In this document: piece by piece, positions 5,501 through 64,000 of the stretch
How positions within the stretch are numbered: the first letter of the stretch is position 1
How the letters are laid out: each line of letters starts with the position of its first letter
Source of the DNA: Haliotis rufescens
Lineage: Eukaryota
Direction: 5' to 3'
Assembly (NCBI RefSeq): GCF_023055435.1
Contig: NW_025964035.1
Span: 868,001-932,000, forward strand
Length of the DNA: 64,000 nt
Notes under the pieces: model-generated
What the model saw: only the letters and a program-made list of their open reading frames with translations
Told to the model about the DNA's origin: nothing
Database searches by the model: none
Translations under genes and position numbers: made by a program

Positions 5501-8500
5501 CTACCCCGGATCTTCACGGGTCTTGTTGTTCAACGCCGCACTAGTCCAAGTGTATGACGGCGGTATTTGACGATTTGGTCACTCAGCGAGCCTGACCACC
5601 CAATCCCCTTTGTCGCCTCTTACGACAAGCACAGTCGCCTTTTAAGGCAGATTCCTGCTTATGACTTAAATTGTCATAACGTACCAGTGTCTCACCTGCA
5701 CGGCCATATGTTAAAGTAACGTTACAATATATCTGTTCTTCACGACCAGAAGTTGAAATAACGTTGTAATGTATCTATTCTATACGACAATACATGTGCT
5801 CTAAACAGCCAGAAGAAGCAACGTCGATGGAATAGATGTAATCTAACAATTATACAATGATGACGAGGTTACATTGTCGCGGACTTCAGGTGACGGAAAT
5901 TGACATTGCAGACACAGATGAATCTACATTAGCTCGGCACCCATGAACATCAGGTCTTGTCTTCAGCAACCCATGCTTGTCGTAAAAGTCGGCTGACGGG
6001 ATCGGGTTGTCAGACTCAGTGACTCGGTTGAAGCATGTCATCATATCCCAGTGGCATAGATCGATGTTCATGATGTCAGGCACTGGCTTGTCTGGTCCAG
6101 ACTCGATTATTTACAGACCGTCGTCATGTAGCTGGAATATTGCTGAGTGCGGCGTTTAAAAACGAACAGACCGAAACAGATTCAAAGAACAAAACAACAG
6201 AAGCAGGGTGGAGCCTCAGCGTCTTCAGAAGCTATGCTGCACCGGAGAAACGAGTGACCAAATCGTCAAATACCGCTGTCATACACTTGGAATAGTGCGG
6301 CGTTAAACAACAAGACCCGTGAAGATCCGGGGTAGAATAGGTCTTCAGCAACCCATGCTTGCCGTAAAAGGCGACTATGCTTGTCGTAAAAGGCGACTAT
6401 GATTGTCGTAAAAGGCGACTAACCGGATCGGGTGGTCAGGCTCGCTGACTTGGTTGATGCATGTCATCGATCCCTATTGCGTGGATCGATGCTCATGATG
6501 TCAATCTATGGATTGTCTTGTCCAGACTCGATTATTTACATACCGTCGTCATATAGCTGGAATATTGCTGAGTGCGGCGTTAAACATCAAACCAACCAAC
6601 CAACGTTAAACAACAAACAAGCAGACAGACAGTAGCTCGATGGCTGTATAACTTACCTCCACCCATGAATCCTGGCCCGACCATAGACTCCACTGGAACA
6701 CAAACAATGAAGGGCTAATGGAACCCCGGTAATATACCCCGCCAACATGTGGCGTTGTTTGGTGGTTGTCATTTAACAATGCAGCATATCTTACGTGCTC
6801 AGCATGAAATGGCTAAAGGTACAAGGTTAATTCCATTGGCCATTGACGACATCTTTGAAACCTTCTATGTTTGGTATCTATATCCTATAGGCCTATCAAC
6901 AATATTTTTTTGTATTCATAAATTCAGTAACACAACTACTCATTCATTTTGTTCTTAATGTAACGAGATACATAAATGTAAACTAACAAACTGCGAATAG
7001 TGTACACATTGTATTGAACTGTGAATTTTGAACACAGAGTATTGAGATGTGAATATTGTTAACATTGCATTGAACTGTGAATATTGAACACAGTGTATTG
7101 AGATGTGAATATTGTTAACATTGTATTCAACTGTGAATATTGCAAACAGAGTATTGAGATGTGAATATTGTTGACGTTGCATTGAACTGTAAATATTGCA
7201 AACAATGTATTTAGATGTTAATATTGTTAACATTGCATTGAACTGTAAATATTGCACACAGTGTATTGAGAGGTGAATATTGTTAATATTGTATTGAACT
7301 GTGAATATTGAACACAGTGTATTGAGATGTGAATATTGTACACATTGCATTGAATTGTGAATATTGAACACAGTGTATTGAGATGTGAATATTGTGAACA
7401 TTGCATTGTACTGCGAATATTGCAAACAGTGTATTGAGATGTGAATATTATGAACATTGCATTGAACTGTGAATATTGCAAACAGTGTATTGAGAGGTGA
7501 ATATTGTTAACATTGCATTGAACTGTGAATATTGCACACAGTGTATTGAGATGTGAAAATTGTACACATTGCATTGAGCTGTGAATATTGAACACAGTGT
7601 ATTGAGATGTGAATATTGTTAACATTGCATTGAACTGTGAATATTGCACACAGTGTATTGAGATGTGAATATTGTTAACATTGCATTGAACTGTGAATAA
7701 TGCACACAGTGTATTGAGATGTGAATATTGTTAACATTGTATTGAACTGTGAAATTGCACACAGTGTATTGAGGGGTGAATATTGTTAACAGTGTATTGA
7801 GATGTGAATATTGCCCACAGTGTATTGAGATGTGAATATTGTTAATATTGTTTTGAACTGTGAATATTGCACACAGTGTATTGAGATGTTAATATTGTTA
7901 ACATTGTATTGAACTGTGAATATTGCACACAGTGTATTGAGATGTGAATATTGTTAATATTGTTTTGAACTGTGAATATTGCACACAGTGTATTGAGATG
8001 TTAATATTGTTAACATTGTATTGAACTGTGATTATTGCCCACAGTGTATTGAGATGTGAATATTGTTAATATTGTTTTGAACTGTGATTATTGCACACAG
8101 TGTATTGAGATGTGAATATAGTTCACATTGCATTGAACTGTGAATATTGCACACAGTGTATTGAGATGTTAATATTGTTAACATTGCATTGAACTGTGAT
8201 TATTGCACACAGTGTATTGAGATGTGAATATAGTTCACATTGCATTGAACTGTGAATATTTAACACAGTGTATTGAGATGTGAATATTGTTCACATTGTA
8301 TTGAACTGTGAATATTTAACACAGTGTATTGAGATGTGAATATTGTTAACACTGTATTGAACTGTGAAATTGCACACAGTGTATTGAGGGGTGAATATTG
8401 TTAACAGTGTATTGAGATGTGAATATTGCCCACAGTGTATTGAGATGTGAATATTGTTAATATTGTTTTGAACTGTGAATATTGCACACAGTGTATTGAG

Positions 8501-10161
8501 ATGTTAATATTGTTAACATTGCATTGAACTGTGATTATTGCACACAGTGTATTGAGATGTGAATATTGTTCACATTGCATTGAACTGTGAATATTTAACA
8601 CAGTGTATTGAGATGTGAATATTGTTCACATTGCATTGAACTGTGAATATTTAACACAGTGTATTGAGATGTGAATATTGTTCACATTGTATTGAACTGT
8701 GAATATTGCACACAGTGTATTGAGATGTGAATATTGTTAACATTGTATAGAGATGTGAATATTGTTCACATTGTATTGAACTGTACATATTGCACACAGT
8801 GTATTGAGATGTGAATATTGTTAACATTGTATTGAACTGTGAATACTGCACATATTGCATTGAGATGTGAATATTGTTGACGTGGTATTGAACTGTGAAT
8901 AGTGTTCTCATTGCATTGAACTGTGAATATTGTCCACTTTGTATTGAACTGTGAATATTGTACATATTGTTTTGAAATGTGAATATTCTACATATTGTAT
9001 TGAACTGTGAATATTGTTCTCATTGCATTGAACTGTGAATATTGTACACTTTATATTGAATTGTGAATATTGTACACTTTGTATTGAAATGTGAATTTTG
9101 TACACATTGTATTGAGATGTGAATATTGTACACATTGTATTGTGATGTTAACATTATATACTTTGTATTGAACTGTGAATATTGTACATATTGTATTGAG
9201 ATGTGAATATTGTACATATTGTATTGTGATGTGAATATTGCACATAGTGTATTGAGATGTGAATATTATATACTTTGTATTGAACTGTGAATATTGTATA
9301 TATTGTATTGAGATGTGAATATTGTACACTTTGTATTGAATTGTGAATATTGTAAACTTTGTATTGAAACGAGAATATTGTACATATTGTATTGAACTGG
9401 GAACTTTGTACACTAGTATTATATCACATAGGCTTAGCTGAGATCCACAACATGTTCGTGAATGTGCCATATCCAATACTTACTTAAAGGACTGCCTAGC
9501 AGTTCCCTTGACATCATTGTTTAGTTAGATGTAAATAGTGTTATGACATACACTTTAAATCGTGGGGAAAATGCATAAACTTGCCCAACATGTAAAACAT
9601 CATCCGTCCAAGATATGAAAAAAATATGATTCTTAAATTAATTTTAATACTAGTATACATCTTACCATTACGTTATGTATAATATTTTGGTTGCATGTAT
9701 AATACATACTTCATGCATAATGGTCAATTAAACAATCTTTGTTCATGCCTCGCGTTTTAACGTTGTAGTCACGTTGACTCAACAAGGAATTACAATACTT
9801 ATAACGCATAGTTACCTCCGCCCCATTGTCCGGTGACACCTGGAAATTGAATCAACGTTATTGGTAACAAACTCAGGTACATTTTATAATGCACCAACAT
9901 TGTACAAATGACTTTCATAAACATGACAGTTACACAAACATACTTTACTTAATGCCTTTGCGGAATGCCTCATACATTTGAGCTGGAACATAAGCTCCCA
10001 GCCTGTTCACAACAATTGCTGGAGATATTTGATGTCAGGTAAAATCACAAATGCACACCTACTGATTATTGAAAAATATAAATAAGCGTAAACCTACCTT
10101 TCAATGTCAACAAAACGACTAATGGCTGCACAAGGATCCTCACTGATACCATATTGACCAT
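2565..10161 (-). CDS. Gene A: secreted Gly/Met-rich low-complexity protein (3' end unresolved). Coding exons 10098-10161, 6657-6692, 5047-5175, 3626-3649, 2565-2633
   Basis: All introns are GT-AG and phase 1. Spliced peptide: MVNMVSVRILVQPLVVLLTLKVES-MVGPGFMGGGGFGMELGGGMGGGMGQGGVGGSGVGRSAAPRGTGGMGMPGGFPLMSLDQLAEYNEMPYFQRPLAARIASAQWR... The hydrophobic N-terminus ending V-E-S looks like a signal peptide. Internal exon lengths 36/129/24/69 are all multiples of 3. Confidence 0.75.
3240..3530 (-). mobile_element. SINE family 2 (tRNA-like head, ~280 bp, V-domain-like ...gggtttc...tttcctcccac core)
   Basis: TSD tcttgtcttatg. Copies at 22391-22623, 30270-30557, 35333-35613, 36731-37012, 43488-43712, 46931-47213, 54908-55184 and 63660-63942. 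The V-domain label is from recall. Confidence 0.88.
3790..4130 (+). mobile_element. SINE family 3 (tRNA-derived, ~340 bp, Meta-domain-like core, (CCTCA)n tail)
   Basis: gtggtagagcgtccgcc...ggttcgatcccc head, then cataccaaaagacgttaaaagatggtac...gcattaagg core. Copies at 21023-21366, 33486-33793, 39300-39592, 41378-41665 and 58648-58980. The Meta label is from recall. Confidence 0.85.
4780..5010 (-). mobile_element. Penelope-like retroelement RT C-terminal remnant (related fragments at ~28840-28910 on - and ~42950-43035 on +)
   Basis: Translates VYI*QCLRYNRE*SFFEDL*KRQMTLSQKLFNQGCNIQGLSIAFK. This resembles the PLE thumb-region motif VYISQLIRY..C....F..R...L..KL..QGY (family assignment from recall). 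Confidence 0.5.
5047..5175 (-). CDS. Gene A exon 3 (Gly/Met-rich)
   Basis: Acceptor tttgtgtttaaacag, donor gtacgt; overlaps ORF 4874..5164; encodes GGFGMELGGGMGGGMGQGG...GMPGGF. Confidence 0.8.
6315..6620 (+). mobile_element. SINE family 4 (~270-300 bp, no tRNA head; gcttgtcgtaagaggcgactaa hairpin; (AAAC/CAAC)n tail)
   Basis: Copies at 3030-3228, 5260-5522, 5940-6160, 20596-20740, 27380-27648, 30750-31017, 33218-33455, 35015-35288, 44515-44695 and 48760-49008. Confidence 0.88.
6975..9415. repeat. AT-rich satellite, 28-bp subunit / 56-bp dimer, in gene A intron 1
   Basis: Repeats of tattgcacacagtgtattgagatgtgaa + tattgttaacattgcattgaactgtgaa over ~2.4 kb. Confidence 0.95.
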
Positions 10162-10932: not shown

Positions 10933-13900
10933 TTAGAGGAGGCTAAGTAAGAATGGATCTGGTCCCATGGCATGGTTAGGATCAACCATTTGATATGTAG
11001 AATGATGTGATTCAAATCCAACGCCTATCCCTTGATTTGCACCCAACCCTACATCAGGGCCGTGAAAAGAACCCATATTAGGTGCATGAATGTCCCTCCA
11101 TGGGTTTCCAAAACCCACATCCGGGCCAGGGAACGGAGCTGCGTTTCCAAAACCCATATCAGTTGCATGTCTGTCCCTCATTTGGTGTCCCAAACCCATC
11201 TCAGCACCGTGGAACGGACCTGGGTGTCCAAATCCAACATCGGTAGCCATACCCATATCAGGGCCTTGAAGCCGACCTACGTCTCTGAAACCCGTATGAG
11301 TAGCATGGCGATCTGCCATTGGGTGACCAGAACGTGTGTCCATTCCTGCTCCTTGTCTGGAATGTAATGTATCAATAGGTCCTGTACCCATCCCAAGAGC
11401 AGCATCGGCGTGTCCTACACCTGTATCTACAACACCACCAGATGCCTTGTCTGGCCCTAAAGTCTGAAAAGGACGTCCACCCCCTAGCCTCTGAACAGCA
11501 ATTTGAATATCCTGTATGTTACTTTGACCCTGGTTAGCCGTCAGCATGTCCATGGCGGCCTTGTTCTCTGACGCAAATTGAGATCTTGAGGCAGCATCAA
11601 GTCTGAGGTTTCCACCATGCGTGTTAAGACCACTACTATGTCCCTTCTCCATTAATTTATCATTTGCACCTAGCGACTGCGTTATTCTCAGCCTACCCCC
11701 AAACCTGTCAATGTGTGGATCCCTAACGGGACTATTGATGTCCGCAGCACTGATCACTATGGGGAGTCGGAATTTAGTGAGAAGCTCCGCATCAGTAATC
11801 CGACCCCCATCTACTATGTCAGTGACATTCTGTTTACCACTGGTAAACGTAGAACCAGAACGACTATCAAGTCCTTTAGCTTTGTTTAACACGTCCCCAA
11901 CACCGCCTGAAGAACTGTTCTCTGTCAGCATGTCAGGAGACATCACTGATAAGTCTGTGTGTTGTGCATCACTGCCAAGGGCATTGTTCGACAAACTTCT
12001 ACCTTGCTCTGATTGTCTGGTGGGGTCATTTTGACCACCATCCTGTAAAGTATTCCTCAGTGGAACCGAGTCTGCATGGAGATCCTTATTAGAAACTTGG
12101 CCCATAAGCGTGTCTCTGCCACTAACACTTCCCGTGATACTGTCATTAAGACGGTTATTGTTTAATCCCAACTTGGTCACATCTCCAGTGGACTTAGTTG
12201 TTTGAGTCATATCGCTGCCTGTTCTCCCAAGTATTCCATTCTTTAGTGATGTGCCATCATGTGATAATTCCTGGGACAAAGATAATGACCCTTGAGCACT
12301 TCTGCCCATATTTGGTAAAAGGACATCCTTTGCTGGCTGCGTACTCTCTTCATTACCCGTAATTCTGTTCTGGTTTAAATGAAGATCTGTTTTACGGTGA
12401 AAGAAGTTCTTATCAGAAAGAGTCGTTCCTTGTGTCAAAGAATTGCTCCCTACTGTACCAACCTTGGGATCTTTTTGTGTGTCAAATGTCGATAAGGTCT
12501 GTTTTTCCCTCAACAGAGCATCAGGTGATTTTCCCCCGAGGCCAACAGGCGATGTCATTGCAAATTTGGCACCGTTGTTCCCGGTAAGTTTTAGATCCCT
12601 TACCTCTGCGACACCCGGTGTTTCATGGACAGAATTGATCGTGGGTCTCTTTGAAAATATTTTTGTAGTGCTACCAACAGCCGAACTCACAAATCTAGCT
12701 TGATCATTAAAATGAGAGTTCATTCTTGAAGGTGAATGCGTCCCCCATCCGCGTGTGTCTACCCGGGATATCTGTGCCATTCTACTCCTTGGGAAAGATG
12801 GCGACATACTCTGGTGGGAAAAGCTTGACATCCGGTCAGAGGACCTAGGTGAATCCGAAGACATCCTTTGGGAACTATGGTCAAATGATGAGCCAGTGCC
12901 CACAAGTTGATGTCGATCTATGGCCTGCATTGATCTACGAGAGCTACCTGACGTTTCTCCTCGCATAGCGTGAGAATTGAAGTGAGAGTTGGATCTGTCT
13001 GTCATTCTCCAGTTAGGATGTGTCATCATGTCAGAGGAATGAGACATTGTTCTAGACGAACGGGGATTCTCTGAAAATAATGATGCCTCTCTGGAAGGGT
13101 GTGACATCCTTCTGTCTGACATCAGCCCTACATCCCTGAAATCCCTTCTACCACTCTGCAACCGTGCGTTGGCAAAATCCTGGCTCAGTCCACCAGGTTG
13201 TTGGGACATACCTGAGGATACTCTTGTAGGCGTCATCTGATTTGCAGATTGTTTCCTGTCAAATGTAAATCCAGCATGATCAGAGGCAAACTGTGATTGG
13301 CGACTTGTAGCTAGCTGTGTTGCGGACTGAGACAACATTCGTTGTGTTTGACCAAGTTGACTTCCAGCAGGGTCGCCCATTAGGTGAGTACCACCTGAGG
13401 CCTGCATTGCATTAGTTCCAGTACCAGAACCTGAAATCGCTTGACTACTAGCCAGATTAGGTGTCGGAACACCATCCCTTAATATGGCTCTTTGAAACTG
13501 GTTATCAGCAGGCCTGGTCGGAGACGTTCCAAGATCAGTTGATGCCATATTTCCAGCTGAGAAGCGCGCAGTGTCTTGCAATAAGGGATTCGTACCAGTG
13601 CCGGGCATGGACTGACCATGCCCACTGGAACCTCCTAGAAAGGCTCCTGTTTGATCGGCATTAGCAAAGCCTGATTGTTGACCAGAGGAGCCTCTGAGTT
13701 GAGTGTCGGCAATAGAAGAGGATAGGTGACGAGATGACTGCTCCATTCCTGTGATGTGGTTAGTAGGATTAGTCCTGCTCAGTGGATGTTCTCGGAAGCC
13801 AGTACCCATGTCCATCTGTGACGGCGGTCCTCTGTGTGTCAGTCCCATTCTCCTCCGCTCATGCAGTGCCATCTGGTGAGATGTGTGAAGGCCACGCCCA

Positions 13901-14603
13901 CGGTCATGTGAGGATGTTGATCGAGGAGCCACATCGGCAGGGTAGGGTTCAGTTCCCATTCCACTCCGCCCTGGATAATGTCCGCCAAGACCTTGATCAA
14001 ATGCTCCAGGACCAGGGTCGTAAGGTCCAGGTCCACCCACAGACGGATCATAGGGTCCAGACCCTGCCATAGTTTGATCATAGGGCCCTGCTCCCCCGCC
14101 AAGCCTGGGATCATAAGGACCAGGTGGTCCCATACTTGGATCATAAGGACCAGCAGCTCCCATGCTTGGATCATAAGGACCGACTGGTCCCATGCTTGGA
14201 TCATAAGGACCGGATGTCCCCATACTTGGATCATAAGGACCGGGTCTTCCCATACCTGGATCATAAGGTCCGCCTCTTCCCATACTTGGATCATAAGGTC
14301 CAGCACCTCTGGCTGGATCATATGGTCCCGGACCCATGCTGCCCATGCCGCCCATTCCGGGATCTACACTGCCAACTGTACCCATCCCTGGATCGTAAGG
14401 TCCTCTGCTCCTTAGCGGATCATAAGGACCTGGACCAGCCATAGTATTGCCATAGGGGTCAACTGCTCCCATTCTAGGATCATAGGTCGGGGCCTGGTGC
14501 CTGGGGAACATATGAGAAGCAGTCATTGGTTCAGTCAGAGCCGGTGTCAGTGATGCTGGAGCCATGCCAGGCGGAGGCTGAGCCCACATACCAGTAGTAG
14601 CAT
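10933..14603 (-). CDS. Gene B terminal exon (1222 full sense codons): GPYDPSMG repeats, Ser/Arg/Met/His-rich middle, Gly/His/Phe/Met C-terminal repeats
   Basis: 3.66-kb uninterrupted ORF (10933..14589) extended to acceptor cctattgttttacag at 14604; TAA stop at 10933-10935; AATAAA ~210 nt downstream. Confidence 0.92.
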
Positions 14604-17600
14604 CTGTAAAACAATAGGGTATATCTCAAACGATATGCGTATCTTTGATTGAGTATATGTTAATATTTCAAAGAAAAACCTAGCACTGTTTGATTTGATT
14701 TTCGAACAAAAGTGTTGAAGTATTGAAACTTTTTCATCCTGCTGGACGAAATAATAGAGCAAAGAGTTAATTAGATCAATTTAACTAGTGACGCTATAAC
14801 TGATAACTACACATTATACACGTCGTGCACTTAGCTTCAAATTGATACTGATACATAGGGTTCAGGTTCATATATAACGCGGAGGTTCATACATAGAGTG
14901 GAGGTTCATACATAGAGTGGAGGTTCCTACATACAGAAGGGTTCATACATAGAGTACAGGTTCATACATAGAGTGGAGGTTCATACACAGAGTGGAGGTT
15001 CATACATAGAGTAGAGGTTCATACATAGAGCGGAGGTTCATACATAGAGTGGAGGTTCATACATAGAGTGGAGGTTCATACATAGAGTTGAGGTTCATAC
15101 ATAGAGTAGAGGTTCATACATAGAGTGGAGGTTCATACATATAGGGGAGGTTCATACATACAGAGGAGGTTCATACATGCAGTGGAGCTTCATACATAGA
15201 GCGGAGGTTCATACATAGAGCGGAGGTTCATACATAGAGCGGAGGTTCATACATAGAGCGGAGGTTCATACATAGAGTGGATGTTCATACATAGAGTGGA
15301 GGTTCATACATAGAGCGGAGGTTCATACATGGAGTGGAGGTTCACACATAGAGTGGAGGTTCACACATAGAGTGGAGGTTCATACATACAGAGGAGGTTC
15401 ATACATGGAGAGGAGGTTCATACATAGAGTGGAGGTTCATACATAGAGCGGAGGTTCATACATAGAGCGGAGGTTCATACATAGAGTGGAGGTTCACACA
15501 TAGATTTGAGGTTCATACATAGAGTGGATGATCATACATAGAGCGGATGTTCATTCATAGAGCGGGGGTTCATACATAGAGTGGAGGTTCACACATAGAG
15601 TGGAGGTTCATACATACAGAGGAGGTTCATACATGGAGTGGAGGTTCATACATAGAGCGGAGGTTCATACATAGAGCGGAGGTTCATACATAGAGCGGAG
15701 GTTCATACATAGAGTGGAGGTTCACACATAGAGTGGAGGATCATACATAGAGCGGAGGTTCATACATAGAGTGGATGTTCATACATAGAGCGGGGGTTCA
15801 TACATAGAGTGGAGGTTCATACATAGAGTGGATGTTCATACATAGAGCGGAGGTTCACACATAGAGCGGAGGTTCATACATAGAGTGGAGGTTCACACAT
15901 AGATTGGAGGTTCATACATAGAGTGGATGTTCATACATAGAGCGGGGTTCATACATAGAGTGGAGGTTCATACATAGAGCGGAGGTTCACACATAGAGCG
16001 GAGGTTCAGACATAGAGTGGATGTTCATACATAGAGCGGAGGTTCATACATAGAGCGGAGGTTCACACATAGAGTGGAGGTTCAGACATAGAGTTGATGT
16101 TCATACATAGAGCGGGGTTCATACATAGAGTGGATGTTCATACATAGAGCGGAGGTTCACACATAGAGCGGAGGTTCATACATAGAGTGGAGGTTCACAC
16201 ATAGATTGGAGGTTCATACATAGAGTGGATGTTCATACATAGAGCGGGGTTCATACATAGAGTGGAGGTTCATACATAGAGCGGAGGTTCACACATAGAG
16301 CGGAGGTTCAGACATAGAGTGGATGTTCATACATAGAGCGGAGGTTCATACATAGAGCGGAGGTTCACACATAGAGTGGAGGTTCAGACATAGAGTTGAT
16401 GTTCATACATAGAGCGGGGTTCATACATAGAGAGGATGTTCATACATAGAGCGGAGGTTCACACATAGAGCGGAGGTTCATACATAGAGTGGATGTTCAT
16501 ACATAGAGTGGAGGTTCATACATAGAGCGGAGGTTCATACATAGAGCGGAGGTTCACACATAGAGTGGAGGTTCATACATGGAGTGGAGGATCATACATA
16601 GAGTGGAGGTTCATACATAGAGTGGAGGTTCACACATAGAGCGGAGGTTCATACATAGAGTAGAGGTTCATACATAGAGTGGATGTTCATACATAGAGCG
16701 GGGGTTCATACATAGAGCGGATGTTCATACATAGAGCGGGGGTTCATACATAGAGTGGAGGTTCATACATCGAGCAGAGGTTTCTACATTGAATGTAGCT
16801 CGCAATGTGACGTTCATACACCTATTGAAGGGCGAGGTGGAAAAGCCGTACTTCGTATATTCATGATATTTTAGAATTATTCGCGTGTCAATACATACCG
16901 AAGCATGGTATCCTGCAGCCAGCTGGGGGAAATAAGAAAAATTTGGTAAACAACATATGAAATGGATCTGTATGTACATACCTAGTCCTAGGTTCACACT
17001 GATTATGTCAACACACACGTGAGATTAAAACACATGTTGCAATGTCTCGTAGTAGGAGCCGAGCATCAATCATTCCTGCTTACTTGAAGGTATGTATGGG
17101 TATGTTTGTGTGTGTGCGTGTGTGTATGTGTGTGTGTGTGTGTGTGTTTATGTGTATGCTTNNNNNNNNNNNNNNNNNNNNNNNNNNNNNNNNNNNNNNN
17201 NNNNNNNNNNNNNNNNNNNNNNNNNNNNNNNNNNNNNNNNNNNNNNNNNNNNNNNNNNNNNNNNNNNNNNNNNNNNNNNNNNNNNNNNNNNNNNNNNNNN
17301 NNNNNNNNNNNNNNNNNNNNNNNNNNNNNNNNNNNNNNNNNNNNNNNNNNNNNNNNNNNNNNNNNNNNNNNNNNNNNNNNNNNNNNNNNNNNNNNNNNNN
17401 NNNNNNNNNNNNNNNNNNNNNNNNNNNNNNNNNNNNNNNNNNNNNNNNNNNNNNNNNNNNNNNNNNNNNNNNNNNNNNNNNNNNNNNNNNNNNNNNNNNN
17501 NNNNNNNNNNNNNNNNNNNNNNNNNGTGTATCGTTTAAATTTTGCACTTAACGTAGATTTTTTTAAACCAACCACATTTGTTTGCAAGACATGCAGGATA

Positions 17601-20600
17601 TCCTGACAAAACGTGTTGTCACAAGAAAAAACCTGTTTGGCTCCTCCTCTGACAACAATTGTTAAACATTGGATGCTGAACCCAAGTCACGCACTCACTC
17701 TTTATTTGCACATACGAGTAGGTGAAGATACTGGCATCTTTAGTGAACCCACATTCAGGAAGAACTACCACCAAACGCTCTGGCCTTCATGAATTATTAT
17801 GTATTGCTTATAAGAGTAATTATTTTTGTATAGTGTGACAGTCAATATTTTGTATTGTGTATGACAGTAATTATTTATTTATTGCGAGTAAGATTTATCA
17901 TTTGTGTATTGCGTGTGACAGTAATTATTATGTATTGTATGTGACAGAAATTTTGTATTTCGAGTAAGAGTAACTATTTATGCATTGTGTTTGAGAGTAA
18001 TTATTCATGTATTGGGTGACAGTTACTCTTTATATATTGCATGTGAGAGTGATTATTTATGTATTGCATGGAAGAGCAATTATTTATGTATTGTGTGTGA
18101 CAGTAACTCTTTATATATTGCAAAAGAGAGTGATTATTTATGTATTGCGTGAAAGAGAAATTATTTATGTATCGTGTGTGAAAAGTAATTATTTATGTAT
18201 TGTGTGTGAGATTAATTCTTTATATATTGCGTGTGAGAGTAACTATTTACGTATTGCGTGTGAGATTAATCATTTATGTATTGTGTGTGACAGTTTCACT
18301 TAATATGTTGCTTGTGAGAGTAACTATTTATGTATTGCGTGTGAAAGTAATCATTTATGTATTGTGTGTGACAGGAACTCTTTATATATTGCTTTTTAGA
18401 GTAATTATTCATGTATAGCGTGTGACAGTAATTATTCATGCAATGTGTGTGACAATAATTTTTTTATATATTGCTTGTGGTAGTAACTATTTATGTATTG
18501 CGTGGAAAAGTAATTATTTATGCATTGCGCGGAAGAGTAATTATTTATGTATATTCATGGAAGAGTAATTATTTTTGCATTGTGTGACAGTCATAATTTA
18601 TGCATTGCGTGGAAGAGTAATTATTTTGTGCCAGTCATTATTTATGTATTGCGTGGAAGAGTAATTATATTTTGTATTGTGACAGTAATAATTGATGTAA
18701 TGCGTTGAAGAGTAATTAGAGTAATTATTTATGTATGGTGTGGAAAAGTAATTATTTATGTATTGCGAAAAAGAGTACTCATTTATGTATTACGTGTAAG
18801 AGTTATCATATTCTATCTGAAAGGGAACCTTCTCGCACATTTCGTGTCTGTTTGTGTGTTTTCTTTACATTACGAGCAACGTAATATGGGGTACAATGGC
18901 ACACAATCAGCCAAGTCACCGAATTTGACCAGCTGATCCAGTGCAGTGGCCTGTTTACGACAGGTAAAAGAGAGCTGGGACCTATTATTAACATGGCTCC
19001 ACGAGACAGCTCCCCAGTCGTTAGTTAACGTCGTCTAGCGAACATAAAATCACTTACCATCGGCTACTCGATCAGCGACTGCAGTAGCTGAAATGACATC
19101 ACAATATGATTATAGCGTTATCAAAATAACGTTATCTCCAGGAATAACGACTTCTTCAACAGCATGAAGACGTAATTGTCCAATTAGAATGGAGGCTGCT
19201 CAGAACCAATAAAATATCAATATAATTATTCCTACGTTTATGAATTTACTTTATATAGCTCGATGAACGTTTCAATACAAATGCATGACAATATCAATAT
19301 ATATATATGTTGAAAACATCAACGGATATTAATCAATGTATGGCTGTATGTTTATTTACCGAGTTCGGCATTCATGACCTTCATTTTTCCAGCCTTCTTC
19401 TTGGCGTTTCGTATAAAACCTGCACAAGAGGAAAATAATATGAAATAGGTGCATACATGTATTTAAACAATACACTCATACCTTTAGTTTAACAACACAC
19501 TTATACCAGTAGTTTAACAACATCCGTATACCTGAACTTTAACAACACATTTATATATGTAGTTTAAGAACACACTGATACCTGTAGTTTAACAATACAC
19601 TCATACCTTTAGTTTAAGAACACACCCATACCTGTAGTTTAACAACACATTTATACCTGTAGCTTAAGAGCACACTCATACATTTAGTTTAAGAACACAT
19701 TCATACCTGGAGTTTAACAATACATTTATATCTGTAGTTTAAGAACACACTCATACCTGGAGTTTAACAACACATTTATATCTGTAGTTTAAGAACACAC
19801 TCATACCTGGAGTTTAACAACATACTTATACCTGAAGTTTAAGAACACACTCATACCCGTAGTTTAACAACACACTTATACCTGAAGTTATAATATTCGT
19901 TATAACATCGCACAGTGGCACGTAACTGACAGTGGTATATTTAGTTGCCGTTTGCGGTATCATATCAAATAAGCAGAACATTTTGGGCGATGCATCAGCC
20001 CAGATATGTCACCGTACACGGCGACTAAAGACACCATAACGAACTGTCTGGTAACCATATCGTACAACCGTTGACATTAAGGGTCAAAGGGAGACTACTC
20101 TTCAATCCTTAAAGGCCAAATCTTGTTGAAAATTGTAACTATTATCTTTAACAATAAAGTTACGTGATCTCAGAAATGATTAATGTCCTTGCACATAACA
20201 ATTAATGATATAAAAACACAAAACAGTGTCGAATAAGGAATTTATGTACCAGAAGTTTCATGTGAAATATGTGAGGTGTGTGTTGGAAAATCCAAGATGG
20301 CTGTTGGTATACGGTCTAATATTAGTAACAACCATCTTGCATATTTACTGACGATTTTGGGGCTCATGTGGGGTCAGTAGTTCTGCTCACTGATTGGTCA
20401 ATTTCACTTTAAGGCATAATAAACAATATAAACTGACATTTGTACTTAATAATTGGGATTATTTTCCAACTGTAACTCACGTGACACAACACAACCTGAT
20501 GCAGGTCGTGAACCTTATGGCGTGTCCCTTTGGTATGATTGTGCACCTAGTTCTGTAAAACACCGACTAACAGAACTTCTTTGAGAGGCATTTAGATTTT

Positions 20601-23600
20601 TGTTTGTTTGTTGTTTAACGCCGCACTCAGCAATATTCCAACTATATGAAGGCGGTCTGTAAATAATCGAGTCTGGACCAGACAATCCAGTGATTGATAT
20701 CATAAGCATCGACCCACGCTATTGGAATACGGTGACACACTGAGGCATTTAGAAGTTAGAGTACTAAGTAAGGATATGATATATTGATGAACAACTTCTT
20801 TATCACAATTAGCAGCGACGTTTCGGTGAAGGTTCTGACACTGTTACCAAGCAAGTGGTGTCCAGAGTATGGTTAACAAGTTCTTATAACAGGCCAACAT
20901 TGACTTAGTTTTCAAGCGAAGTAACAGCATTCAGAACACCATTAATGCAACAGGAACACCACTATTCATCCACAAGCAAGACCTATCAGGAGCAGTGTAC
21001 CACATTCCTCGCAATTGTGGACAGGTGAGGTGAGGTGAAATGGGGTTTAACGTCGCGTCCAAGATTATTGCACTTATATAGCGACGTGCATGCACGCGTG
21101 TGTGTGTGTGTGGCTGCTTGTACTAGTCCGGACTGATGCCAATTTATAGTGCTAGCACACTGAGATACCATGCCGCAGTTTAACATAAATACCCCACTCA
21201 GACACAGTATACTGACTGCGAGCCGACCAGTTCTTGTTTTAGCCCCTTAATGCCGAGCGCCAGGCAGGGTAACAACAAGTACCATCTTTTAACGTCTTTT
21301 TGGTATGACGCGGCCGGGGATCAAACCCCGGGCCTTCCGCTCTACCACTAGACCACGGAGGCGGTCTAATTTTGGACAGGCTGATATTGGCGAAACATCA
21401 AGGCTCCTCAAAACACGAAATAAAGAACATCAAAATTGACTCAACGTCAGCTCTATCAGACCATATCCGTGGCAACCCAAGCTACAACGTCCCGTGAGCG
21501 AGACAGATTGCGATTACAATTATCGGGAGACGACCCCTTTAATGCTGCACACCGTTGTGTAGCACGTGCAGTACGTGTTTGCGCTGTTCCTCCTACGTTG
21601 CAGTGGTATGCAACGGAAAAAGCCGAGTGGAACTGAATGTAGATCGGTACTGAGAACAGACATTGACCTCCGTGTGATCTGATTGTACTTACATGCAATG
21701 TTACCCCCGCCGGTCGAAGGAACTGAAATATATACAGGAAAAATGAAGGCCAAGAAAATTTGTTTCCGGCAAAATAAGACCTTCATGAACATGAGTCATC
21801 GGTAATAGTTGTAAGAAAAGTTGGGTTTGCGATTTTCATACGGACGTAGAATAATTTCGCTCTGATTCTCAAGACTCAAGAATGTGGTTTGTATTGAATT
21901 AAAACATACTTAATCACACACCCATTGGTTCAAATAATACCTATGAAATTTAAGTAGCATGTGTTGTTGCAATGTGTCATATCGTGATATGATCAATCAG
22001 AACATGAAGATATTTACCTTTGCGTTTGAGTATGTGATCGTAAATGATGTACATTGCTTACATTTCGATGATCGCCCCTTTTTAACCTTACGTTCAGAAA
22101 TAGAAACACTTACTTTCTCCTCCGCCTGAAACATAAATGAGTTGATGTTGTATTGTTCATAACAATCAGTACCGTCATAGTTATAGTTATCATCATCATC
22201 ATCATCATCATTACCAGTTAGTGTCGTAGCATGATGCAATTTTCATTTCTGATCTCTGCAGTATGATATTGCTTCCGTTCTTTGAATGTCGTAACTCTAA
22301 TTACAACTCATAAGATATTTAAAATAGAAATCGAACTGAACTTGCTCTAAACATATACCTTAACTGCCGAGTAAAGAGAGTATACAATTGGAGTGAGTGA
22401 GTTGGGTTTAACGCCGCTCTTAACAGTATTCCAGCTATAGCGCGGCGTGTCAATTTAATGTGGGAGGAAAGCCCGAAGTGATGCAGGTCTGAGACGTTTA
22501 CCACTTCGGTGAAACCCATGAGCATCGGTGTGGTGCTGACAAACCTTGAAACATAATCGGGGCGAACCGGGATTCGAACCCACAATCATTAGTTTCTGGC
22601 GTGCCCAAGGGACGCAACTCTGTATTGTTTGTTTGTTTCAGTTGTGTATACTTTCTTTTGTACCACACTGTACACCCACCGTTAAGGAAGCTTGTGATAG
22701 CCAACTGCACCTTGTCAGCTGAAACAGCAAACATCAGAAGATATATTTCCAGCCCACTATTTGCTTAATGACAAGCACTGCAGGTTGAAAAGTCAACATT
22801 AGTTTGAAAAATTCTAACTTACTGTGACAACATGCATTGTATGAAATACGTCCCTTAAAGACTTCAATTAAACATTTAAGAATATTATGCCATCCTGCTG
22901 CAGTGACAATGCTAAATGTTAGTATGTGTTCAGACACGAAGTGCCAGGATTTGTTTATTTGATTATTTGGATAAGCTTTATTTAACTCTGTCCGTTTTTT
23001 TCTACATACTGTAAACTACGGTTATCATGAACTCAAAGGGACCACTAATTTTAGTTCGTTATAACTGCAGTTCGTTATAAGCATATATACAGCATATATA
23101 CACCAAATGGCCGGGCCAAAAATAAACAGTTCGTTATATCCGTCTCTTAAAAGCTTCGACATAAGCGTGTTCGTTATAAACGACATGAACACAACTTCAG
23201 TGGACTAGTCAACTTGGAAGCCCTCTATTTGTATTGTTAATCGTGGCTGCTACATGCATGTAATATAGATTTGTATCATCAGCTTTGGTACCACATCGGT
23301 TCAGTGCTTATGTACTTACCCATCATTTCTTTGGGGCTTGTATTTGCTGTAACATATATATGAACATTAATTCATTGTAAGTTTAGTGATGAATGAGACA
23401 GAAAAACTATTGAATATTTCTGTCAACGCTAAGGTGACAATTTGAAGAAAAGAATATTCCAAAATATTAATTGGTCAGTTGTTATCAAACGCAGTTCGTT
23501 GTGCAGAGATGCGCCTATAATATTGACAGCATGCAATGATTGTTGATTCGAATCCAATGACACCATAACTATGAAACTTGTTCTATTGTACTACATGCAA

Positions 23601-26600
23601 TATTACCAACATTACCACAAATATATTTCGCGATAAATTTCGACTTAGTGACATTCATAATAAAACCCTGTTCCACAAATCGATCTTTGTGCTAGGACTC
23701 TCGTAACTCCCATACTGTAACACAGACTTACGACATTCGTAGCGTAAAATCAGTTTGAGGAACGGCCCTGATATTATTTAATTCCTGAAGCTCAAACATC
23801 AAGATCCGGTAAATGGGGATACTCACGTGGCAATGTGGCTCTGAGTTGTTTTTCTGAAACAGAAATGGCATGTTCAATTTTCGAAATTTTACCAGGTACT
23901 TTTAGATGCGTCATTTGTGGTCCAGTATTTTTTAAATTAAAGAAAACGAATCTGTAAACACTTCATAATGAAGTCCGATATGCTCTTCAAGAAATATAAA
24001 AGAACACCCCTCACCAACTTACCTAAATTCCAGCACATGCCTATACAAAGGAAAATGATAATACGTTAGCATAATTCATACATGTTTCAAATTTGAAATG
24101 TCAGAAAAAATGTAGATTAGCTATGTTTGAGAATGAATCACATACTTCAATTGTCCTCCAGATAATTGAACATTCACAATTAGTCGAATTTCTTCCTCTG
24201 ATTAACATATTATTATAACTGTATTTCTTAAATGATTCAGAACAAAACAAATGTATATCTAATAATTTTTAATCAAATATATTTTTGTGGATATACTTAC
24301 CGTCTAGGGCAAACGGGTTCTCTGAAAACGCAATAAAATGTGATTAAACATGAGACTCCTTGACAACATATGTATGTTATTATATAAACCTAACCTGTGT
24401 GAATACATGTAATTCTGTACAACTTATCAACAGCTTTGTCGACATTTCACCTTAACAGACCTACAAATCATTATGTTTTCGTGAGTAAATGGAGTTACGT
24501 AATAAAATCTGATCCTGGCATGTTCGTTGTCCATATTGAAGATATGTCCATATTTGGTCATACATGTAGGACAAAATTAAACAGCAAAGTTTTTTTTGTG
24601 AATTTATTAAACTTGATATATTTATGATTTCCACTGCGGTGATTGATCACGTACCCCCCGGGTCACCCAACAGATGAGGAGGTATGCCTCCGACTCCGCC
24701 CAGTAAACCGGCCCCGCCCACTGTTCCAGCCCCGCCCATTCCACCGGCTCCAGCCATTCCTCCCGCAGCCGCCATTCCAGCTGATGCCGCTTGACCTGTA
24801 GGATAACAAGATCATTCTTTCAAGTACGTTTTTGTCAAAAACTATATTCCAGGTCAAACATATCCCTTCATAGTTGTAAATATAACGCTATTGACTTTTT
24901 GCCATAAAGGAGCCACGAGTGGTCCAGTCCTCTAATGCACCGCATTTCGCTGTAAAGAGTTGCTTCCCAGGGTGCGTTGCTAAAAGCCAATCGCTTGCAA
25001 GCGATGTACAGCGATTCGCCTTACAATGGTACGCTAACTTCCAGCCGCTTGCAATTGCAACAATCGCTGGCAAAATCGCTTCGTTCTCAAACCAAAATGG
25101 CGGCTGAGTTTGACAGCGGAACAAGAAATTCTTGCCTGGATTAGTTTGGAAATTGGCAGCTCACATCGCACCTTCCTTAGTCCGCTCTACATCTTCAAAG
25201 TAGTCATAAATTCATCGAGCGACTTTTATTACGTTCTTCATTTGGGCAAGGCAACCAAGCGGTAGTTCCGCCGCCATTTTGGAAAAGTGCGTAAGCACGG
25301 GGGTGAGCTAAATTTGCTTACTCCAAGCGATTCGTTGCTTGTAACGCGCCCCAAGTGTCTTGAGTGTAAGGAGTAAAGCTAACCAAATCAACTGACAGAG
25401 ACTGGTGATGCCATTGTGATGTCACTGGAACCGATTACGTCATAATAATCTCCAAGCACAGTGATGCAATTTAATTGTTGCAATATCTCCCAGTTTGGTT
25501 AATTGCACGTCATCGTAGCACAACGATCCTCATAATATCAATCACGGGTTTGTCTAGCCTCGACCATGGTGTGGGCTAACAAACAAAACAAACAAACCTT
25601 TCCTTTAGCTTACCTGGAGGAGGAGCCATTTGGGAGAAACATAATCCTGAAACACAGCGAATACATCATAGTAATTTGCTGGTAAACCAGAATGAGACAA
25701 CACAAAATGTGATTTGGGTAAAAACACAAAACAGATCAGAAATGCATCAATAATATCTATCTGTATATTTCAATGTGGTATGCATGTGTTGCCATCGGGC
25801 CATTTATATCATCGTTAAACTGCCGGGCAGAAGAAAGTATACACCCATGTTTTGTGGTGGCTAATGATGAAAGAATGGTTAATCGATGGTGATATAGTTG
25901 ATAAGGGTATCATATTTCTGTTTTGGAGTGTGTAGTAGCTCGGCGACTGTTTGCAACAGAGTAACGTTTCGATAACGTTTTGTATTTTTTTTTAAACTGC
26001 AAATGTTTATTTCTTTTTCCCGATAGATGAGTTCAATCATTCGATACAACTCATAAAGTTGTTTAATTCATACAATCATAAAGTGTCCGTGTTATAAGTG
26101 AAATTAGACTGAGACACACACAAAACGTTTGTTTAACGTTAACATGAGTATCACTCTGGTTCCAAGTTTCAGTCAAGATCGTGTCTTTGTAACGAGTTGT
26201 TCCTCAGATTCTTTACTCTCCCAATGGTGTTACAAGATCATGGTTTACAGGTATGCGGTACATTACACTGCATTATCGCATCTTGTTCTTAATGATACTC
26301 AAGTTATTGTACTGTCCTTTCCTGACGGGTATTTTAGAAAGTGTACACATATTTCGGATGCATGTTTAAATTGTTGTTGTCACGATATTGCTGAATTACT
26401 GCCGATGTAACTTTAAATCTTAACACACTCACTCACTTCTAATGATACACGCAGTGTATCCTAATACTGATCAAAGCAGCGATAAACCCAACACATTCAC
26501 TCACTCACTCACTTTATGATACGGTGCATAATTGGAAAGAAATGGACTAATTTTCTAGTTCTAGTTCTACCGCCCGCAGTAGATTTTTGTATGTCTTTTC

Positions 26601-27875
26601 GAGTAGAAATAGAAAGGAATATATAGACAGACCTGTACTCATATCAAACATTTAAAAAACCCATCAAAAATACAATCGAAGATGATGTTATTTTAAATTC
26701 TTCTCATCATTACAAATAGGATAAATTAATCCAACTTTAAAAAATAAGCGTGTGGACAATGATGATTTATATTTTTACCAGCAATTAACATGTTGATCTA
26801 AAAGTGAAAGTTGTTTTCTCTAGTAAGAGATATATAGACATTCCACGATGCGTCTGTGAATCCAAATAAGCAAGATATAATATGCCTCCCCCAAAAATGA
26901 TTGAGCGACCATAAGTGCTCTGTAAATTTACAACGTAAACGCTAGACAATAATCAATCTTGATTATCAGCCTAAACAGTAATAATCAAAATAGCGGTAAA
27001 AATTGAATGGAACACTCAAAATCTGTGATAACACCACGTGTCCAATAAAATGGTAAGCATGTCCCTCCCTACCGATAGCACCCGCCTCTCACACAATTTG
27101 CATGATAAAATGTATATGTTTGTAGCTTGACGCCGGACATTAGTGCTCGTACGCGACGGCGGCCTGAGAACAAACCAAACAATCAAGCGACCGATGGACC
27201 ACACAATCAAGTGACCGATGGACCACACCATCAAGTGACCGATGGACCACACAATCAAGTGACCGATGGACCACACCATCAAATGACCGATGGACCACAC
27301 CATCAAGTGACCGATGGACCACACAATCAAGTGACCGATGGACCACATAATCAAGTGACCGATGGACCATACAATCAAGTTGGTTGGTTGGTTTGTTGTT
27401 TAACGCCGCACTCAGCAATATTCCAGCTATATGACGGCGGTCTGTAAATAATCGAGTCTGGACCAGACAATCCAGTGATTGATATCATTAGCATCGATCC
27501 ACCCAATTGGGATCGATGACATGCATCAACCAAGTCAGCGAGCCTGACCACCCGATCCCGTTAGTCGCCTTTTACGACAAGCATAGTCGCCTTTTACGGC
27601 AAGCATGGGTTGCTGGAGACCTATTCTACCCCGGAATCTTCACGGGTCCACAATCAAGTGACACAATAGCGCAAACCCAGAATAGAGAAGACGGAATTGT
27701 CAAGTGCGTGTACATTCTTCCCGAAAATGGCGCACGAGTGTAAGCTGAACGCCCTATATGGTACATGCAAGTCCTTGTCATAAAGCTGACCTGGCAGGAA
27801 CTAAAACGGCTGGTCAGAACAACGTGACAAGCCACACCTACCTGTAAGTGTGAATAGGAAACAGGCAGTGAACAT
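10933..27875 (-). CDS. Gene B: secreted ~1375-aa repetitive low-complexity (Gly/Met/Pro/Ser/His-rich) protein. Coding exons 27842-27875, 25614-25646, 24655-24795, 24301-24321, 24023-24040, 23827-23853, 23320-23346, 22114-22125, 21693-21722, 19360-19419, 19058-19087, 16899-16922, 10933-14603
   Basis: All 12 introns are GT-AG and phase 1. Internal exons of 33,141,21,18,27,27,12,30,60,30,24 nt are all multiples of 3. Spliced N-terminus: MFTACFLFTLTGLCFS-QMAPPPGQAASAGMAAAGGMAGAGGMGGAGTVGGAGLLGGVGGIPPHLLGDPGENPFALDGMCWNLEKQLRATLPPNTSPKEMMGGGEIPSTGGGNIACFIRNAKKKAGKMKVMNAELATAVADRVADAGCRIPCFDATTGMWAQPPPGM..., which joins in frame to the 1218-aa ORF. There is an in-frame stop upstream of the ATG. Confidence 0.8.
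14857..16785. repeat. 19-bp minisatellite (ggaggttcatacatagag[t/c])n, ~100 units
   Basis: Direct inspection; lies in the last intron of gene B. Confidence 0.97.
17162..17525. other. Assembly gap (N run) next to a (GT)n microsatellite
   Basis: N run. Confidence 1.
17790..18805. repeat. Degenerate ~27-bp AT-rich minisatellite (gagtaattatttatgtattgcgtgtga)n
   Basis: Direct inspection. Confidence 0.9.
19460..19890. repeat. 25-bp minisatellite (aacacactcatacctgtagtttaag)n
   Basis: ~17 units. Confidence 0.92.
21023..21366 (-). mobile_element. SINE family 3
   Basis: TSD-like aatt.tggacagg. Confidence 0.88.
24655..24795 (-). CDS. Gene B exon 3 (Gly/Ala/Met-rich)
   Basis: Acceptor gttatcctacag, donor gtacgt, 141 nt; GC-rich coding-like island in AT-rich DNA. 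Confidence 0.8.
24970..25352. mobile_element. Probable old MITE
   Basis: Imperfect inverted ends gggtgcgttgc...aatcgcttg / caagcgatt...gtaacgcgcccc. Confidence 0.5.
27180..27380. repeat. 24-bp minisatellite (aatcaagtgaccgatggaccacac)n
   Basis: ~8 units, followed by a SINE insertion with the acaatcaagt duplication. Confidence 0.95.
27380..27648 (-). mobile_element. SINE family 4
   Basis: Full length, TSD acaatcaagt. Confidence 0.9.
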
Positions 27876-62200: not shown

Positions 62201-62709
62201 GCCATGACTTCAATTCAGTGCTATATAAGTTGGTCATCAGAGCCAAGTCCAACAAGACTCCTTTTGCATGTATAGGTGAGTGAGTATATGTTTAATGTGT
62301 AGCAGTCAGGTACTGCTATATAATGGCGGCAAACCAGTGGTTATGGTCAACTCCTTAGCGTTATGATCTGGTACAATCAGAGAGTTCGTACACTGGGGCC
62401 ATCGAGTCTGGTTGTTGAATCATCATGTAATAATGCAAAACGCGAATACCTGGTGTCATCACTATTATTGATTTATAAACAAATGCTAATAATAAAGTCG
62501 AAATCGTACAAGGGGCTCTGCTTTTAAATTTCTTAAGGAAACGGTTATATCTCATTGAATTACGTTATATGTATGTTAAATAATACATATTAGTGTGTGT
62601 CAACTTACCATCAACGAGATCAGAGAATGCTCCGGCTGTGAAAAAAAATTAAAATGTTAATAATAAAGACTTTTATATATTTTTCTACATATTTCGACAC
62701 GACACACGT

Positions 62710-62750
<41 letters not shown>

Positions 62751-63942: not shown

Positions 63943-64000
63943 TTGTGTTTCTGAGCTCGAATTGCTGAGATGCTGGCGATTTGCAATCTCGAAACATTGA

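What the first reader, a model, noticed from the sequence alone, without database searches (positions are those of the whole stretch)
16899..25646. Micro-exon-gene architecture: nine consecutive 12-60 nt symmetric phase-1 exons in gene B
Seen in sequence: exons of 21, 18, 27, 27, 12, 30, 60, 30 and 24 nt, each with a pyrimidine-rich AG acceptor and a GT donor (gtaagt, gtgagt, gtaaat, gtatgt). All are multiples of 3, all phase 1, and they splice into one stop-free frame leading into the 3.7-kb exon. Established: schistosome micro-exon genes (MEGs) use strings of symmetric micro-exons to diversify secreted proteins by exon skipping. Inference: any subset could be skipped in frame, giving combinatorial isoforms. 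ORF finders and many gene predictors would miss this whole region.
Basis: partly seen in the sequence, partly recalled or inferred. Interest (0 to 1): 0.85.

Follow-up and report, generated by a model that had tools for sequence, protein, structure and literature searches.

The report
Micro-exon chain in abalone nacre gene
A red-abalone gene for a secreted nacre-matrix protein really has a chain of ten tiny frame-preserving exons, but together they encode one conserved four-cysteine domain and appear to be always included, not mixed into many isoforms.

Summary
All nine micro-exons sit at the stated places on the minus strand with strong splice sites, far beyond chance (8 strict candidates against 0.5 expected).

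A 14-exon model translates exactly to RefSeq XP_046380125.2 ("hornerin-like", Haliotis rufescens, 1388 aa). All 13 introns are phase 1. The N gap lies inside the m8-m9 intron, and four abalone species show no extra residues there.

The protein is the ortholog of idb_3591, an uncharacterised major nacre protein of H. laevigata. Published MS/MS peptides span the junctions from m3 to the last exon.

The ten micro-exons encode a 97-residue four-Cys domain that is 87% identical between distant abalones, against 53% for the rest. Each species has one annotated isoform. MEG-like combinatorial skipping of these exons is therefore unlikely, although all 1024 subsets would stay in frame.

The neighbouring paralog (gene D) has 19 symmetric small exons and 14 RefSeq isoforms. 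All 14 arise from skipping linker exons, never the homologous Cys-domain exons.

Other first-reader notes on this genome also report MEG-like genes; they are unchecked.

The parts
27842..27875 (-). Exon 1 coding part (34 nt): start codon at 27875, first 11 residues of the signal peptide, donor GTAGGT, ends in phase 1
   Evidence: found by matching the N-terminus of P0003; the model equals P0003
25614..25646 (-). Exon 2 (33 nt, phase 1-1): end of the signal peptide and start of the mature protein
24655..24795 (-). Exon 3 (141 nt, phase 1-1): Gly/Ala/Met-rich linker
24301..24321 (-). Micro-exon m1 (21 nt): start of the conserved domain, holds an NPF tripeptide
24023..24040 (-). Micro-exon m2 (18 nt): holds Cys 1; gene D has an 18-nt exon with Cys at the same position
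23827..23853 (-). Micro-exon m3 (27 nt), donor GTGAGT
   Evidence: junction m3/m4 covered by an H. laevigata peptide
23320..23346 (-). Micro-exon m4 (27 nt)
22680..22718 (-).
   Evidence: present in orthologs and in an MS/MS peptide
22114..22125 (-). Micro-exon m5 (12 nt)
   Evidence: inside the H. laevigata peptide at residues 98-125 of idb_3591
21693..21722 (-). Micro-exon m6 (30 nt); its last base is the first base of the Cys 2 codon
19360..19419 (-). Micro-exon m7 (60 nt): completes Cys 2, Lys-rich stretch, donor GTAAAT
19058..19087 (-). Micro-exon m8 (30 nt); a second in-frame CAG acceptor lies 9 nt inside it
17162..17525 (.). Assembly gap inside the m8-m9 intron, beside a GT microsatellite; not filled or looked up
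   Evidence: orthologs show no residues between m8 and m9
16899..16922 (-). Micro-exon m9 (24 nt): holds Cys 3 and Cys 4 (C-x3-C), donor GTATGT
10933..14603 (-). Last coding exon (3671 nt with the stop codon): about ten GPYDPSMG-type repeats, then a long Ser/Gly/Met-rich low-complexity region with a few conserved islands
   Evidence: (1222 of 1222 identical to P0003)

Best explanation
Gene B is the red-abalone gene for a secreted, mostly disordered nacre-matrix protein. It is RefSeq XP_046380125.2 and the ortholog of H. laevigata idb_3591.

After a signal peptide and a Gly/Ala/Met-rich linker comes a 97-residue four-cysteine domain, probably helical. Ten constitutive micro-exons of 12-60 nt encode it. 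A 3.7-kb exon then encodes GPYDPSMG-type repeats and a long low-complexity tail.

All 13 introns are phase 1. The micro-exons are recognised through near-consensus splice sites (inferred) and are spliced in together, so the domain is always made whole.

The all-phase-1 layout is an inherited feature of this module. It is shared with the neighbouring paralog D. It gives evolutionary freedom to add, lose or duplicate exons. In this gene it is not a regulated source of isoforms.
For: - The exact 14-exon model equals P0003, with all introns in phase 1. The last exon is 1222 of 1222 identical.
- Orthologs in H. cracherodii and H. asinina carry every micro-exon in the same order.
- The domain is 87% identical between H. 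rufescens and H. asinina (84 of 97). The last exon is 53% and the signal peptide plus linker 70%.
- An H. laevigata mantle transcript holds all ten micro-exons. MS/MS peptides at residues 82-97, 98-125, 136-155 and 156-183 of idb_3591 span junctions m3/m4/mX, mX/m5/m6/m7, m7/m8/m9 and m9/last exon.
- idb_3591 is a major nacre protein with a secretion signal and is scarce in the prismatic layer.
- Gene B has one isoform per species. Gene D has 14 in the same annotation, and none touches its Cys-domain exons.
- B and D share intron positions and phases around Cys 1, the 39-nt exon, the split Cys 2 codon and the last two exons.
- Skipping m2, m6, m7 or m9 removes one or two Cys.
Against: - No RNA reads of this species could be examined.
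- The MS database held only the full-length contig, so skip-junction peptides could not have been found.
- Annotation pipelines may under-call skipping of very small exons.
- The fold of the domain is not shown. The single-sequence AlphaFold model of the gene D protein has pLDDT of about 30-40 over the domain.
- B-D homology rests on weak sequence signal: BLASTP E 0.026 and hhalign E 0.0023 at 13% probability, plus gene structure.
Confidence: 0.82

Rival explanations
1. MEG-like diversification: the micro-exons of gene B are skipped in many combinations to give a pool of variant secreted proteins.
For: All 1024 subsets are in frame and stop-free. The protein is secreted. The neighbouring paralog D has 14 annotated isoforms made by skipping symmetric small exons.
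Against: The exons encode a strongly conserved four-Cys domain. Only 64 of 1024 subsets keep four Cys. One isoform is annotated in each of three species. The homologous domain exons of D are invariant in all 14 isoforms. Peptides span most junctions. Micro-exons are only 6.9% of the CDS.
Confidence: 0.06
2. Limited alternative splicing: most micro-exons are constitutive, but one or two weak points give a few minor in-frame variants. Candidates are the 39-nt exon with its GTGGGT donor, the 12-nt exon, and the second CAG acceptor 9 nt inside m8.
For: mX has a weaker donor. The strict scan found an alternative acceptor at 19078.
Against: No such variant appears in the annotated proteins of three species or in the H. 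laevigata contig. The peptide at residues 98-125 contains mX, m5 and m6.
Confidence: 0.11
3. Chance or artefact: the small exons are fortuitous AG...GT pairs in a long intron or UTR, or a product of misassembly around the gap.
For: None beyond the presence of an assembly gap in the region.
Against: There are 8 strict candidates against 0.5 expected. The model matches RefSeq exactly. The exons are conserved in three other species, with peptide evidence.
Confidence: 0.01

Closest known systems
Schistosome micro-exon genes (MEGs)
   Same: Both have a signal peptide and long runs of very small symmetric exons (6-81 bp in MEGs, 12-60 nt here) separated by introns of 0.1-5 kb (PMC10526429, PMC4350168). 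Any subset can be dropped in frame.
   Different: In MEGs most of the CDS is micro-exons, the proteins are under about 190 residues and largely disordered, and alternative splicing is documented. Here micro-exons make up 6.9% of a 1388-residue protein, encode a conserved Cys domain and show no isoforms. There is no sequence similarity, and MEGs are described as restricted to platyhelminths.
SmVAL6, a schistosome gene with a MEG-like portion
   Same: It is a composite gene in which only part of the coding region is built from very small symmetric exons (PMC4350168).
   Different: It belongs to a different protein family and phylum. Its micro-exon part is thought to come from recombination with a MEG. 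Here the array is an inherited part of a paralogous module.
Neighbouring paralog gene D (RefSeq isoforms X1-X14; ortholog of the H. laevigata prismatic-layer protein idb_20008)
   Same: Same strand and same contig, with its coding start about 52 kb from that of gene B. It has a signal peptide, a linker, a four-Cys module split into micro-exons with shared intron positions, and then a large Met/Gly-rich repeat exon. It has 20 consecutive phase-1 introns.
   Different: D has eight extra symmetric linker exons (27-69 nt) that are skipped in combinations to give 14 annotated isoforms. B has a single 141-nt linker exon and one isoform. The domain sequences are only weakly alike.
Class 1-1 modules of extracellular proteins (exon shuffling; general knowledge, cf. 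PMC8001218)
   Same: It is a secreted protein with a phase-1 intron at the signal-peptide end and a module bounded by phase-1 introns.
   Different: Classical 1-1 modules are usually one or two exons per domain. Here a 97-residue domain is cut by nine internal phase-1 introns.
Repetitive low-complexity shell matrix proteins of abalone (Marie 2010, PMC2989941; Mann 2018, PMC6003135)
   Same: It is secreted, Gly/Met-rich, repeat-bearing and predicted to be disordered, and it is found in the shell matrix.
   Different: Those papers describe proteins, not gene structure. The micro-exon-encoded N-terminal Cys domain was not pointed out.

Membership tests
Micro-exon genes (MEG) in the sense of DeMarco 2010 and Philippsen 2015 | Most of the coding region is made of very small symmetric exons | tested here: not met
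   The ten micro-exons total 288 of 4167 coding nt (6.9%). With exons 1-3 added the share is 11.9%. Definition from PMC4350168.
Micro-exon genes (MEG) in the sense of DeMarco 2010 and Philippsen 2015 | Micro-exons are multiples of three, so skipping keeps the frame | tested here: met
   All ten, plus exons 2 and 3, are multiples of three and phase 1-1. None of the 1024 subsets gives a stop or a frameshift.
Micro-exon genes (MEG) in the sense of DeMarco 2010 and Philippsen 2015 | The product has a signal peptide and is secreted | tested here: met
   The N-terminus is hydrophobic. The ortholog is listed with a secretion signal and was recovered from nacre.
Micro-exon genes (MEG) in the sense of DeMarco 2010 and Philippsen 2015 | Alternative splicing of the micro-exons gives a pool of protein variants | tested here: inconclusive
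   One annotated isoform in each of three species, one transcript contig, and junction-spanning peptides all speak against it. No RNA reads could be laid.
Micro-exon genes (MEG) in the sense of DeMarco 2010 and Philippsen 2015 | Sequence kinship with a MEG family; platyhelminth origin | tested here: not met
   The organism is a gastropod. There is no Pfam, Atlas or PDB match. The HMMER search with the gene D paralog gave only low-complexity matches.
Ortholog of the H. laevigata nacre matrix protein idb_3591 | Collinear, near-identical sequence over the N-terminal domain and the repeat region | tested here: met
   The idb_3591 sequence in the paper's supplement shows the same order of signal peptide, linker, four-Cys domain and repeats as P0003 and P0002.
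Ortholog of the H. laevigata nacre matrix protein idb_3591 | The protein is present in the shell matrix | not testable with these tools
   Shown by MS/MS for H. laevigata only. No red-abalone shell proteome was examined.
Four-Cys N-terminal module shared by genes B and D | Same Cys framework and the same intron positions and phases | tested here: met
   All four Cys align. The shared features are the 18-nt exon with Cys 1, the 39-nt exon, the split Cys 2 codon, and the boundaries before and after the C-x3-C exon.
Four-Cys N-terminal module shared by genes B and D | Statistically significant sequence similarity | tested here: inconclusive
   BLASTP E 0.026 over 19 residues. hhalign E 0.0023 at 12.7% probability over 39 columns.

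The most novel reading that the evidence does not exclude
The B/D locus is a molluscan, independently evolved counterpart of flatworm micro-exon genes. Shell-matrix proteins have N-terminal parts built from arrays of all-phase-1 micro-exons.

In gene D the linker part of the array is still used combinatorially, giving at least 14 variants of a prismatic-layer protein. In both genes another part of the array has become fixed as a folded four-Cys domain. That would be a protein domain that arose from, or was fragmented into, a micro-exon array.

Other unchecked first-reader notes on this genome hint that such secreted micro-exon genes may be common in abalone.
Probability: 0.3. Interest if true: 0.7.

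Novelty: new variant of a known kind. Interest (0 to 1): 0.45.

Why it matters
Shell-matrix proteins are usually studied as proteins. Their gene structure is rarely examined, and full-text searches found no paper linking micro-exon genes to molluscs or shell proteins.

This locus shows that one layout, long runs of tiny phase-1 exons, can be used in two ways in adjacent paralogs. In gene B it is a fixed carrier of a conserved domain. In gene D it is a cassette system that gives many variants of a prismatic-layer protein.

That makes three questions testable:
- whether isoform mixtures tune mineral texture;
- how splicing copes with 12-nt exons;
- whether MEG-like genes are really confined to flatworms.

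For gene B itself the result is mostly a correction. The structure is real and already annotated, and the diversification idea is unlikely.

Tried and rejected
- **RNA evidence.** No runs were available, so read laying could not be used.
- **Domain identity.** Pfam found nothing for the last exon, P0001, P0002, P0003 or P0016. The ESM Atlas gave no usable hit. PDB sequences gave none.
- **Wider family search.** HMMER against 1.8 billion representatives with P0006 returned 251 hits, but those listed match the Met/Gly repeat and not the Cys domain. A region-restricted word search found only the two gene B orthologs.
- **Structure.** AlphaFold on P0006 without an alignment gave mean pLDDT 42.6, with the domain at about 30-40. 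It is too poor for a fold search, so none was run. Gene B proteins exceed the 1200-residue limit.
- **More family members in this genome.** A pattern for the C-x3-C exon gave 27 hits against 26 in the control. Only B and D are real, and the look-alike on contig C57 is a minisatellite.
- **Micro-exons as recent copies of each other.** Rejected: the best flank similarity is 15 against a null maximum of 14.
- **Spliced model.** The joined CDS was only translated inside scripts and compared with P0003. Searches used the last exon by reference or database protein ids.
Full report
**What is there.** The window is eukaryotic DNA. Its last large open frame (10933-14603, minus strand) is 100% identical over 1222 residues to RefSeq XP_046380125.2, "hornerin-like" of Haliotis rufescens (P0003, 1388 aa). 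The window lies on a 5.8-Mb contig of that assembly, at G000:C257:868001-932000.

A script placed them exactly:

| Exon | Place | Length (nt) |
|---|---|---|
| m1 | 24301-24321 | 21 |
| m2 | 24023-24040 | 18 |
| m3 | 23827-23853 | 27 |
| m4 | 23320-23346 | 27 |
| m5 | 22114-22125 | 12 |
| m6 | 21693-21722 | 30 |
| m7 | 19360-19419 | 60 |
| m8 | 19058-19087 | 30 |
| m9 | 16899-16922 | 24 |

Orthologous proteins carry 13 further residues between m4 and m5.

With exon 1 (27842-27875), exon 2 (25614-25646), exon 3 (24655-24795) and the last exon, the 14-exon CDS translates exactly to P0003. All 13 introns are phase 1. If phases were independent, with phase 1 at about one third (general knowledge), 13 of 13 would have a probability below 1e-6.

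**More than chance.** A strict splice-site scan found 8 candidates on the gene strand of the region. All 8 are symmetric and open in phase 1. The expectation from the rest of the window is 0.5 (P about 9e-8), with at most 2 in 500 Markov simulations and none on the opposite strand.

**The gap.** The N run at 17162-17525 lies inside the m8-m9 intron, next to a GT microsatellite. I did not fill it or look it up. Proteins of H. cracherodii (P0001) and H. asinina (P0002) pass from m8 to m9 without extra residues. So do a mantle transcript and an MS/MS peptide of H. laevigata. The two sides are therefore in the right order, orientation and frame. A rare extra cassette exon in the gap cannot be excluded.

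**What the gene is.** The product has four parts:
- a hydrophobic N-terminus;
- a Gly/Ala/Met-rich linker (exon 3);
- a 97-residue segment with four Cys (the ten micro-exons);
- about ten GPYDPSMG-type repeats and a long Ser/Gly/Met-rich tail.

No Pfam, Atlas or PDB relative was found.

The supplement of Mann et al. 2018 (PMC6003135) holds the H. laevigata ortholog, transcript contig idb_3591. It has the same order of parts and all ten micro-exons. That paper's Table 1 lists it as an uncharacterised major shell protein with a secretion signal. Its abundance is 0.59-0.90% of the acid-soluble nacre fractions, 0.23-0.35% of the insoluble nacre fractions and 0.01-0.03% of the prismatic fractions.

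Peptides at residues 82-97, 98-125, 136-155 and 156-183 of idb_3591 cross the junctions m3/m4/mX, mX/m5/m6/m7, m7/m8/m9 and m9/last exon. The full-inclusion form is therefore made and deposited in nacre, at least in that species.

**Are the micro-exons shuffled?**

Formally they could be. All 1024 subsets keep the frame and give no stop.

The evidence points the other way:
1. The micro-exon segment is the best-conserved part of the protein. It is 84 of 97 residues identical between H. rufescens and H. asinina, against 53% for the last exon and 70% for the signal peptide plus linker.
2. Only 64 of the 1024 subsets keep four Cys. Skipping m2, m6, m7 or m9 removes one or two. Cys 2 is a split codon shared by m6 and m7.
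3. Each of three annotated species has a single protein for this gene.
4. The same annotation had the power to call skipping at this locus, as the neighbouring gene shows.

**The neighbour, gene D.** The large Met/Gly/Asn/Pro-rich open frame at 60389-61323 belongs to a gene with 14 RefSeq isoforms, X1 to X14, of 605 to 502 residues. I fetched the next 20 kb of the contig and mapped isoform X1.

After a 34-nt first coding exon come 19 consecutive symmetric exons of 18-81 nt. Together they make 690 of 1818 coding nt, or 38%. A 935-nt exon follows. There are 20 phase-1 introns in a row.

Every difference among the 14 isoforms is the loss of whole exons 3 to 10 in combinations (30, 36, 33, 33, 45, 69, 27 and 36 nt). 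These encode the disordered Gln/Pro-rich linker between the signal peptide and a four-Cys segment. The nine exons of that segment are identical in all 14 isoforms.

The H. laevigata ortholog (idb_20008, a prismatic-layer protein) lacks the equivalent of exon 5, like isoform X3.

**Genes B and D compared.** They share the Cys framework and the following intron positions:
- an 18-nt exon with Cys 1 at its third residue;
- a 39-nt exon;
- the intron that splits the Cys 2 codon;
- the boundaries before and after the C-x3-C exon.

Sequence similarity alone is weak: BLASTP E 0.026 and hhalign E 0.0023 at 13% probability. I read this as an old tandem duplication of a module that was already split into micro-exons. 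The micro-exons are not recent copies of each other.

**Mechanism.**
- *Shown:* the exon structure, phases, conservation, secretion, presence in nacre (ortholog) and full inclusion at protein level (ortholog).
- *Inferred:* the micro-exons are constitutive. They are recognised through near-consensus sites: six of ten donors are GTAAGT, and every acceptor has a pyrimidine-rich tract. The four-Cys segment is a small folded, probably helical and disulfide-bonded head on a disordered matrix-forming tail. The all-phase-1 layout serves evolutionary exon gain and loss in gene B, and regulated cassette use only in the linker of gene D.

The helices come from a low-confidence single-sequence model of the gene D protein (pLDDT about 30-40 over the domain) and are only a hint.

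**Comparison with the known.** MEGs are defined by most of the CDS lying in tiny symmetric exons, by small secreted proteins and by documented splice variation. They are said to be confined to platyhelminths (PMC4350168, PMC10526429).

Gene B meets the symmetry and secretion criteria. It fails the "most of the CDS" criterion at 6.9%. It has no kinship with MEGs and shows no variation. It is closer to the composite case of SmVAL6.

Gene D comes much nearer to a MEG in behaviour. Full-text searches found no paper linking micro-exon genes to molluscs other than as schistosome hosts, and none linking microexons to shell matrix proteins.

**Limits.**
- The joined CDS was only translated in scripts and compared with P0003. 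It was never sent to a search tool. Searches used single exons by reference or database ids.
- Isoform evidence for gene D is at annotation level.
- The scan's notebook lists other first-reader notes of MEG-like genes elsewhere in this genome. I did not check them.

**Verdict.** Gene B is an already annotated nacre-matrix gene whose micro-exon chain constitutively encodes a conserved domain.

Noticed in passing
window 59775-64000 and on to G000:C257:947806 (L002, L003): Gene D is a paralog on the same strand. It has 19 consecutive symmetric exons of 18-81 nt, 20 phase-1 introns and 14 RefSeq isoforms. All isoform differences come from combinatorial skipping of linker exons 3-10. It is the ortholog of the H. 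laevigata prismatic-layer protein idb_20008. It is a better MEG-like candidate than gene B.
   Followed up: yes
window 14851-16782; 17792-18803; 19452-19889; 27174-27380: Four introns of gene B hold minisatellites: a 19-nt unit in about 102 copies, a 27-nt unit in about 31 copies, a 25-nt unit in 17.5 copies and a 24-nt unit in 8.6 copies.
   Followed up: partly
window 63661-63945 (similar elements near 22400-22620 and 21060-21370): A SINE-like element of about 285 nt has many copies at 94-97% identity on other contigs of the genome (40 scored). Similar elements appear to lie inside gene B introns (seen by eye, not compared).
   Followed up: partly
window 19078-19087: A second CAG acceptor lies 9 nt inside micro-exon m8. 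It would remove three residues in frame. The strict scan found it, and no evidence of use was seen.
   Followed up: no
window 4874-5164 and 6657-6692, minus strand: Downstream of gene B there is another Gly/Met-rich open frame and a 36-nt symmetric exon candidate of similar composition. This suggests a cluster of Met/Gly-rich secreted-protein genes.
   Followed up: no
window 11656-11745 and 10936-10980, minus strand: There are conserved islands inside the otherwise fast-evolving last exon. One is a stretch of about 30 residues around residues 1119-1148. The other is the last 15 or so residues. Both are largely invariant among three abalone species.
   Followed up: no
window 6955-9476: A long minisatellite yields several spurious open frames of 100-156 residues with a repeating pattern.
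   Followed up: no
L004 (G000:C57:22309600-22319599), about 4590-5100 on the minus strand: A minisatellite has a unit that mimics the C-x3-C exon pattern and gives a Cys-rich repetitive open frame. It is a false positive of the pattern search.
   Followed up: yes
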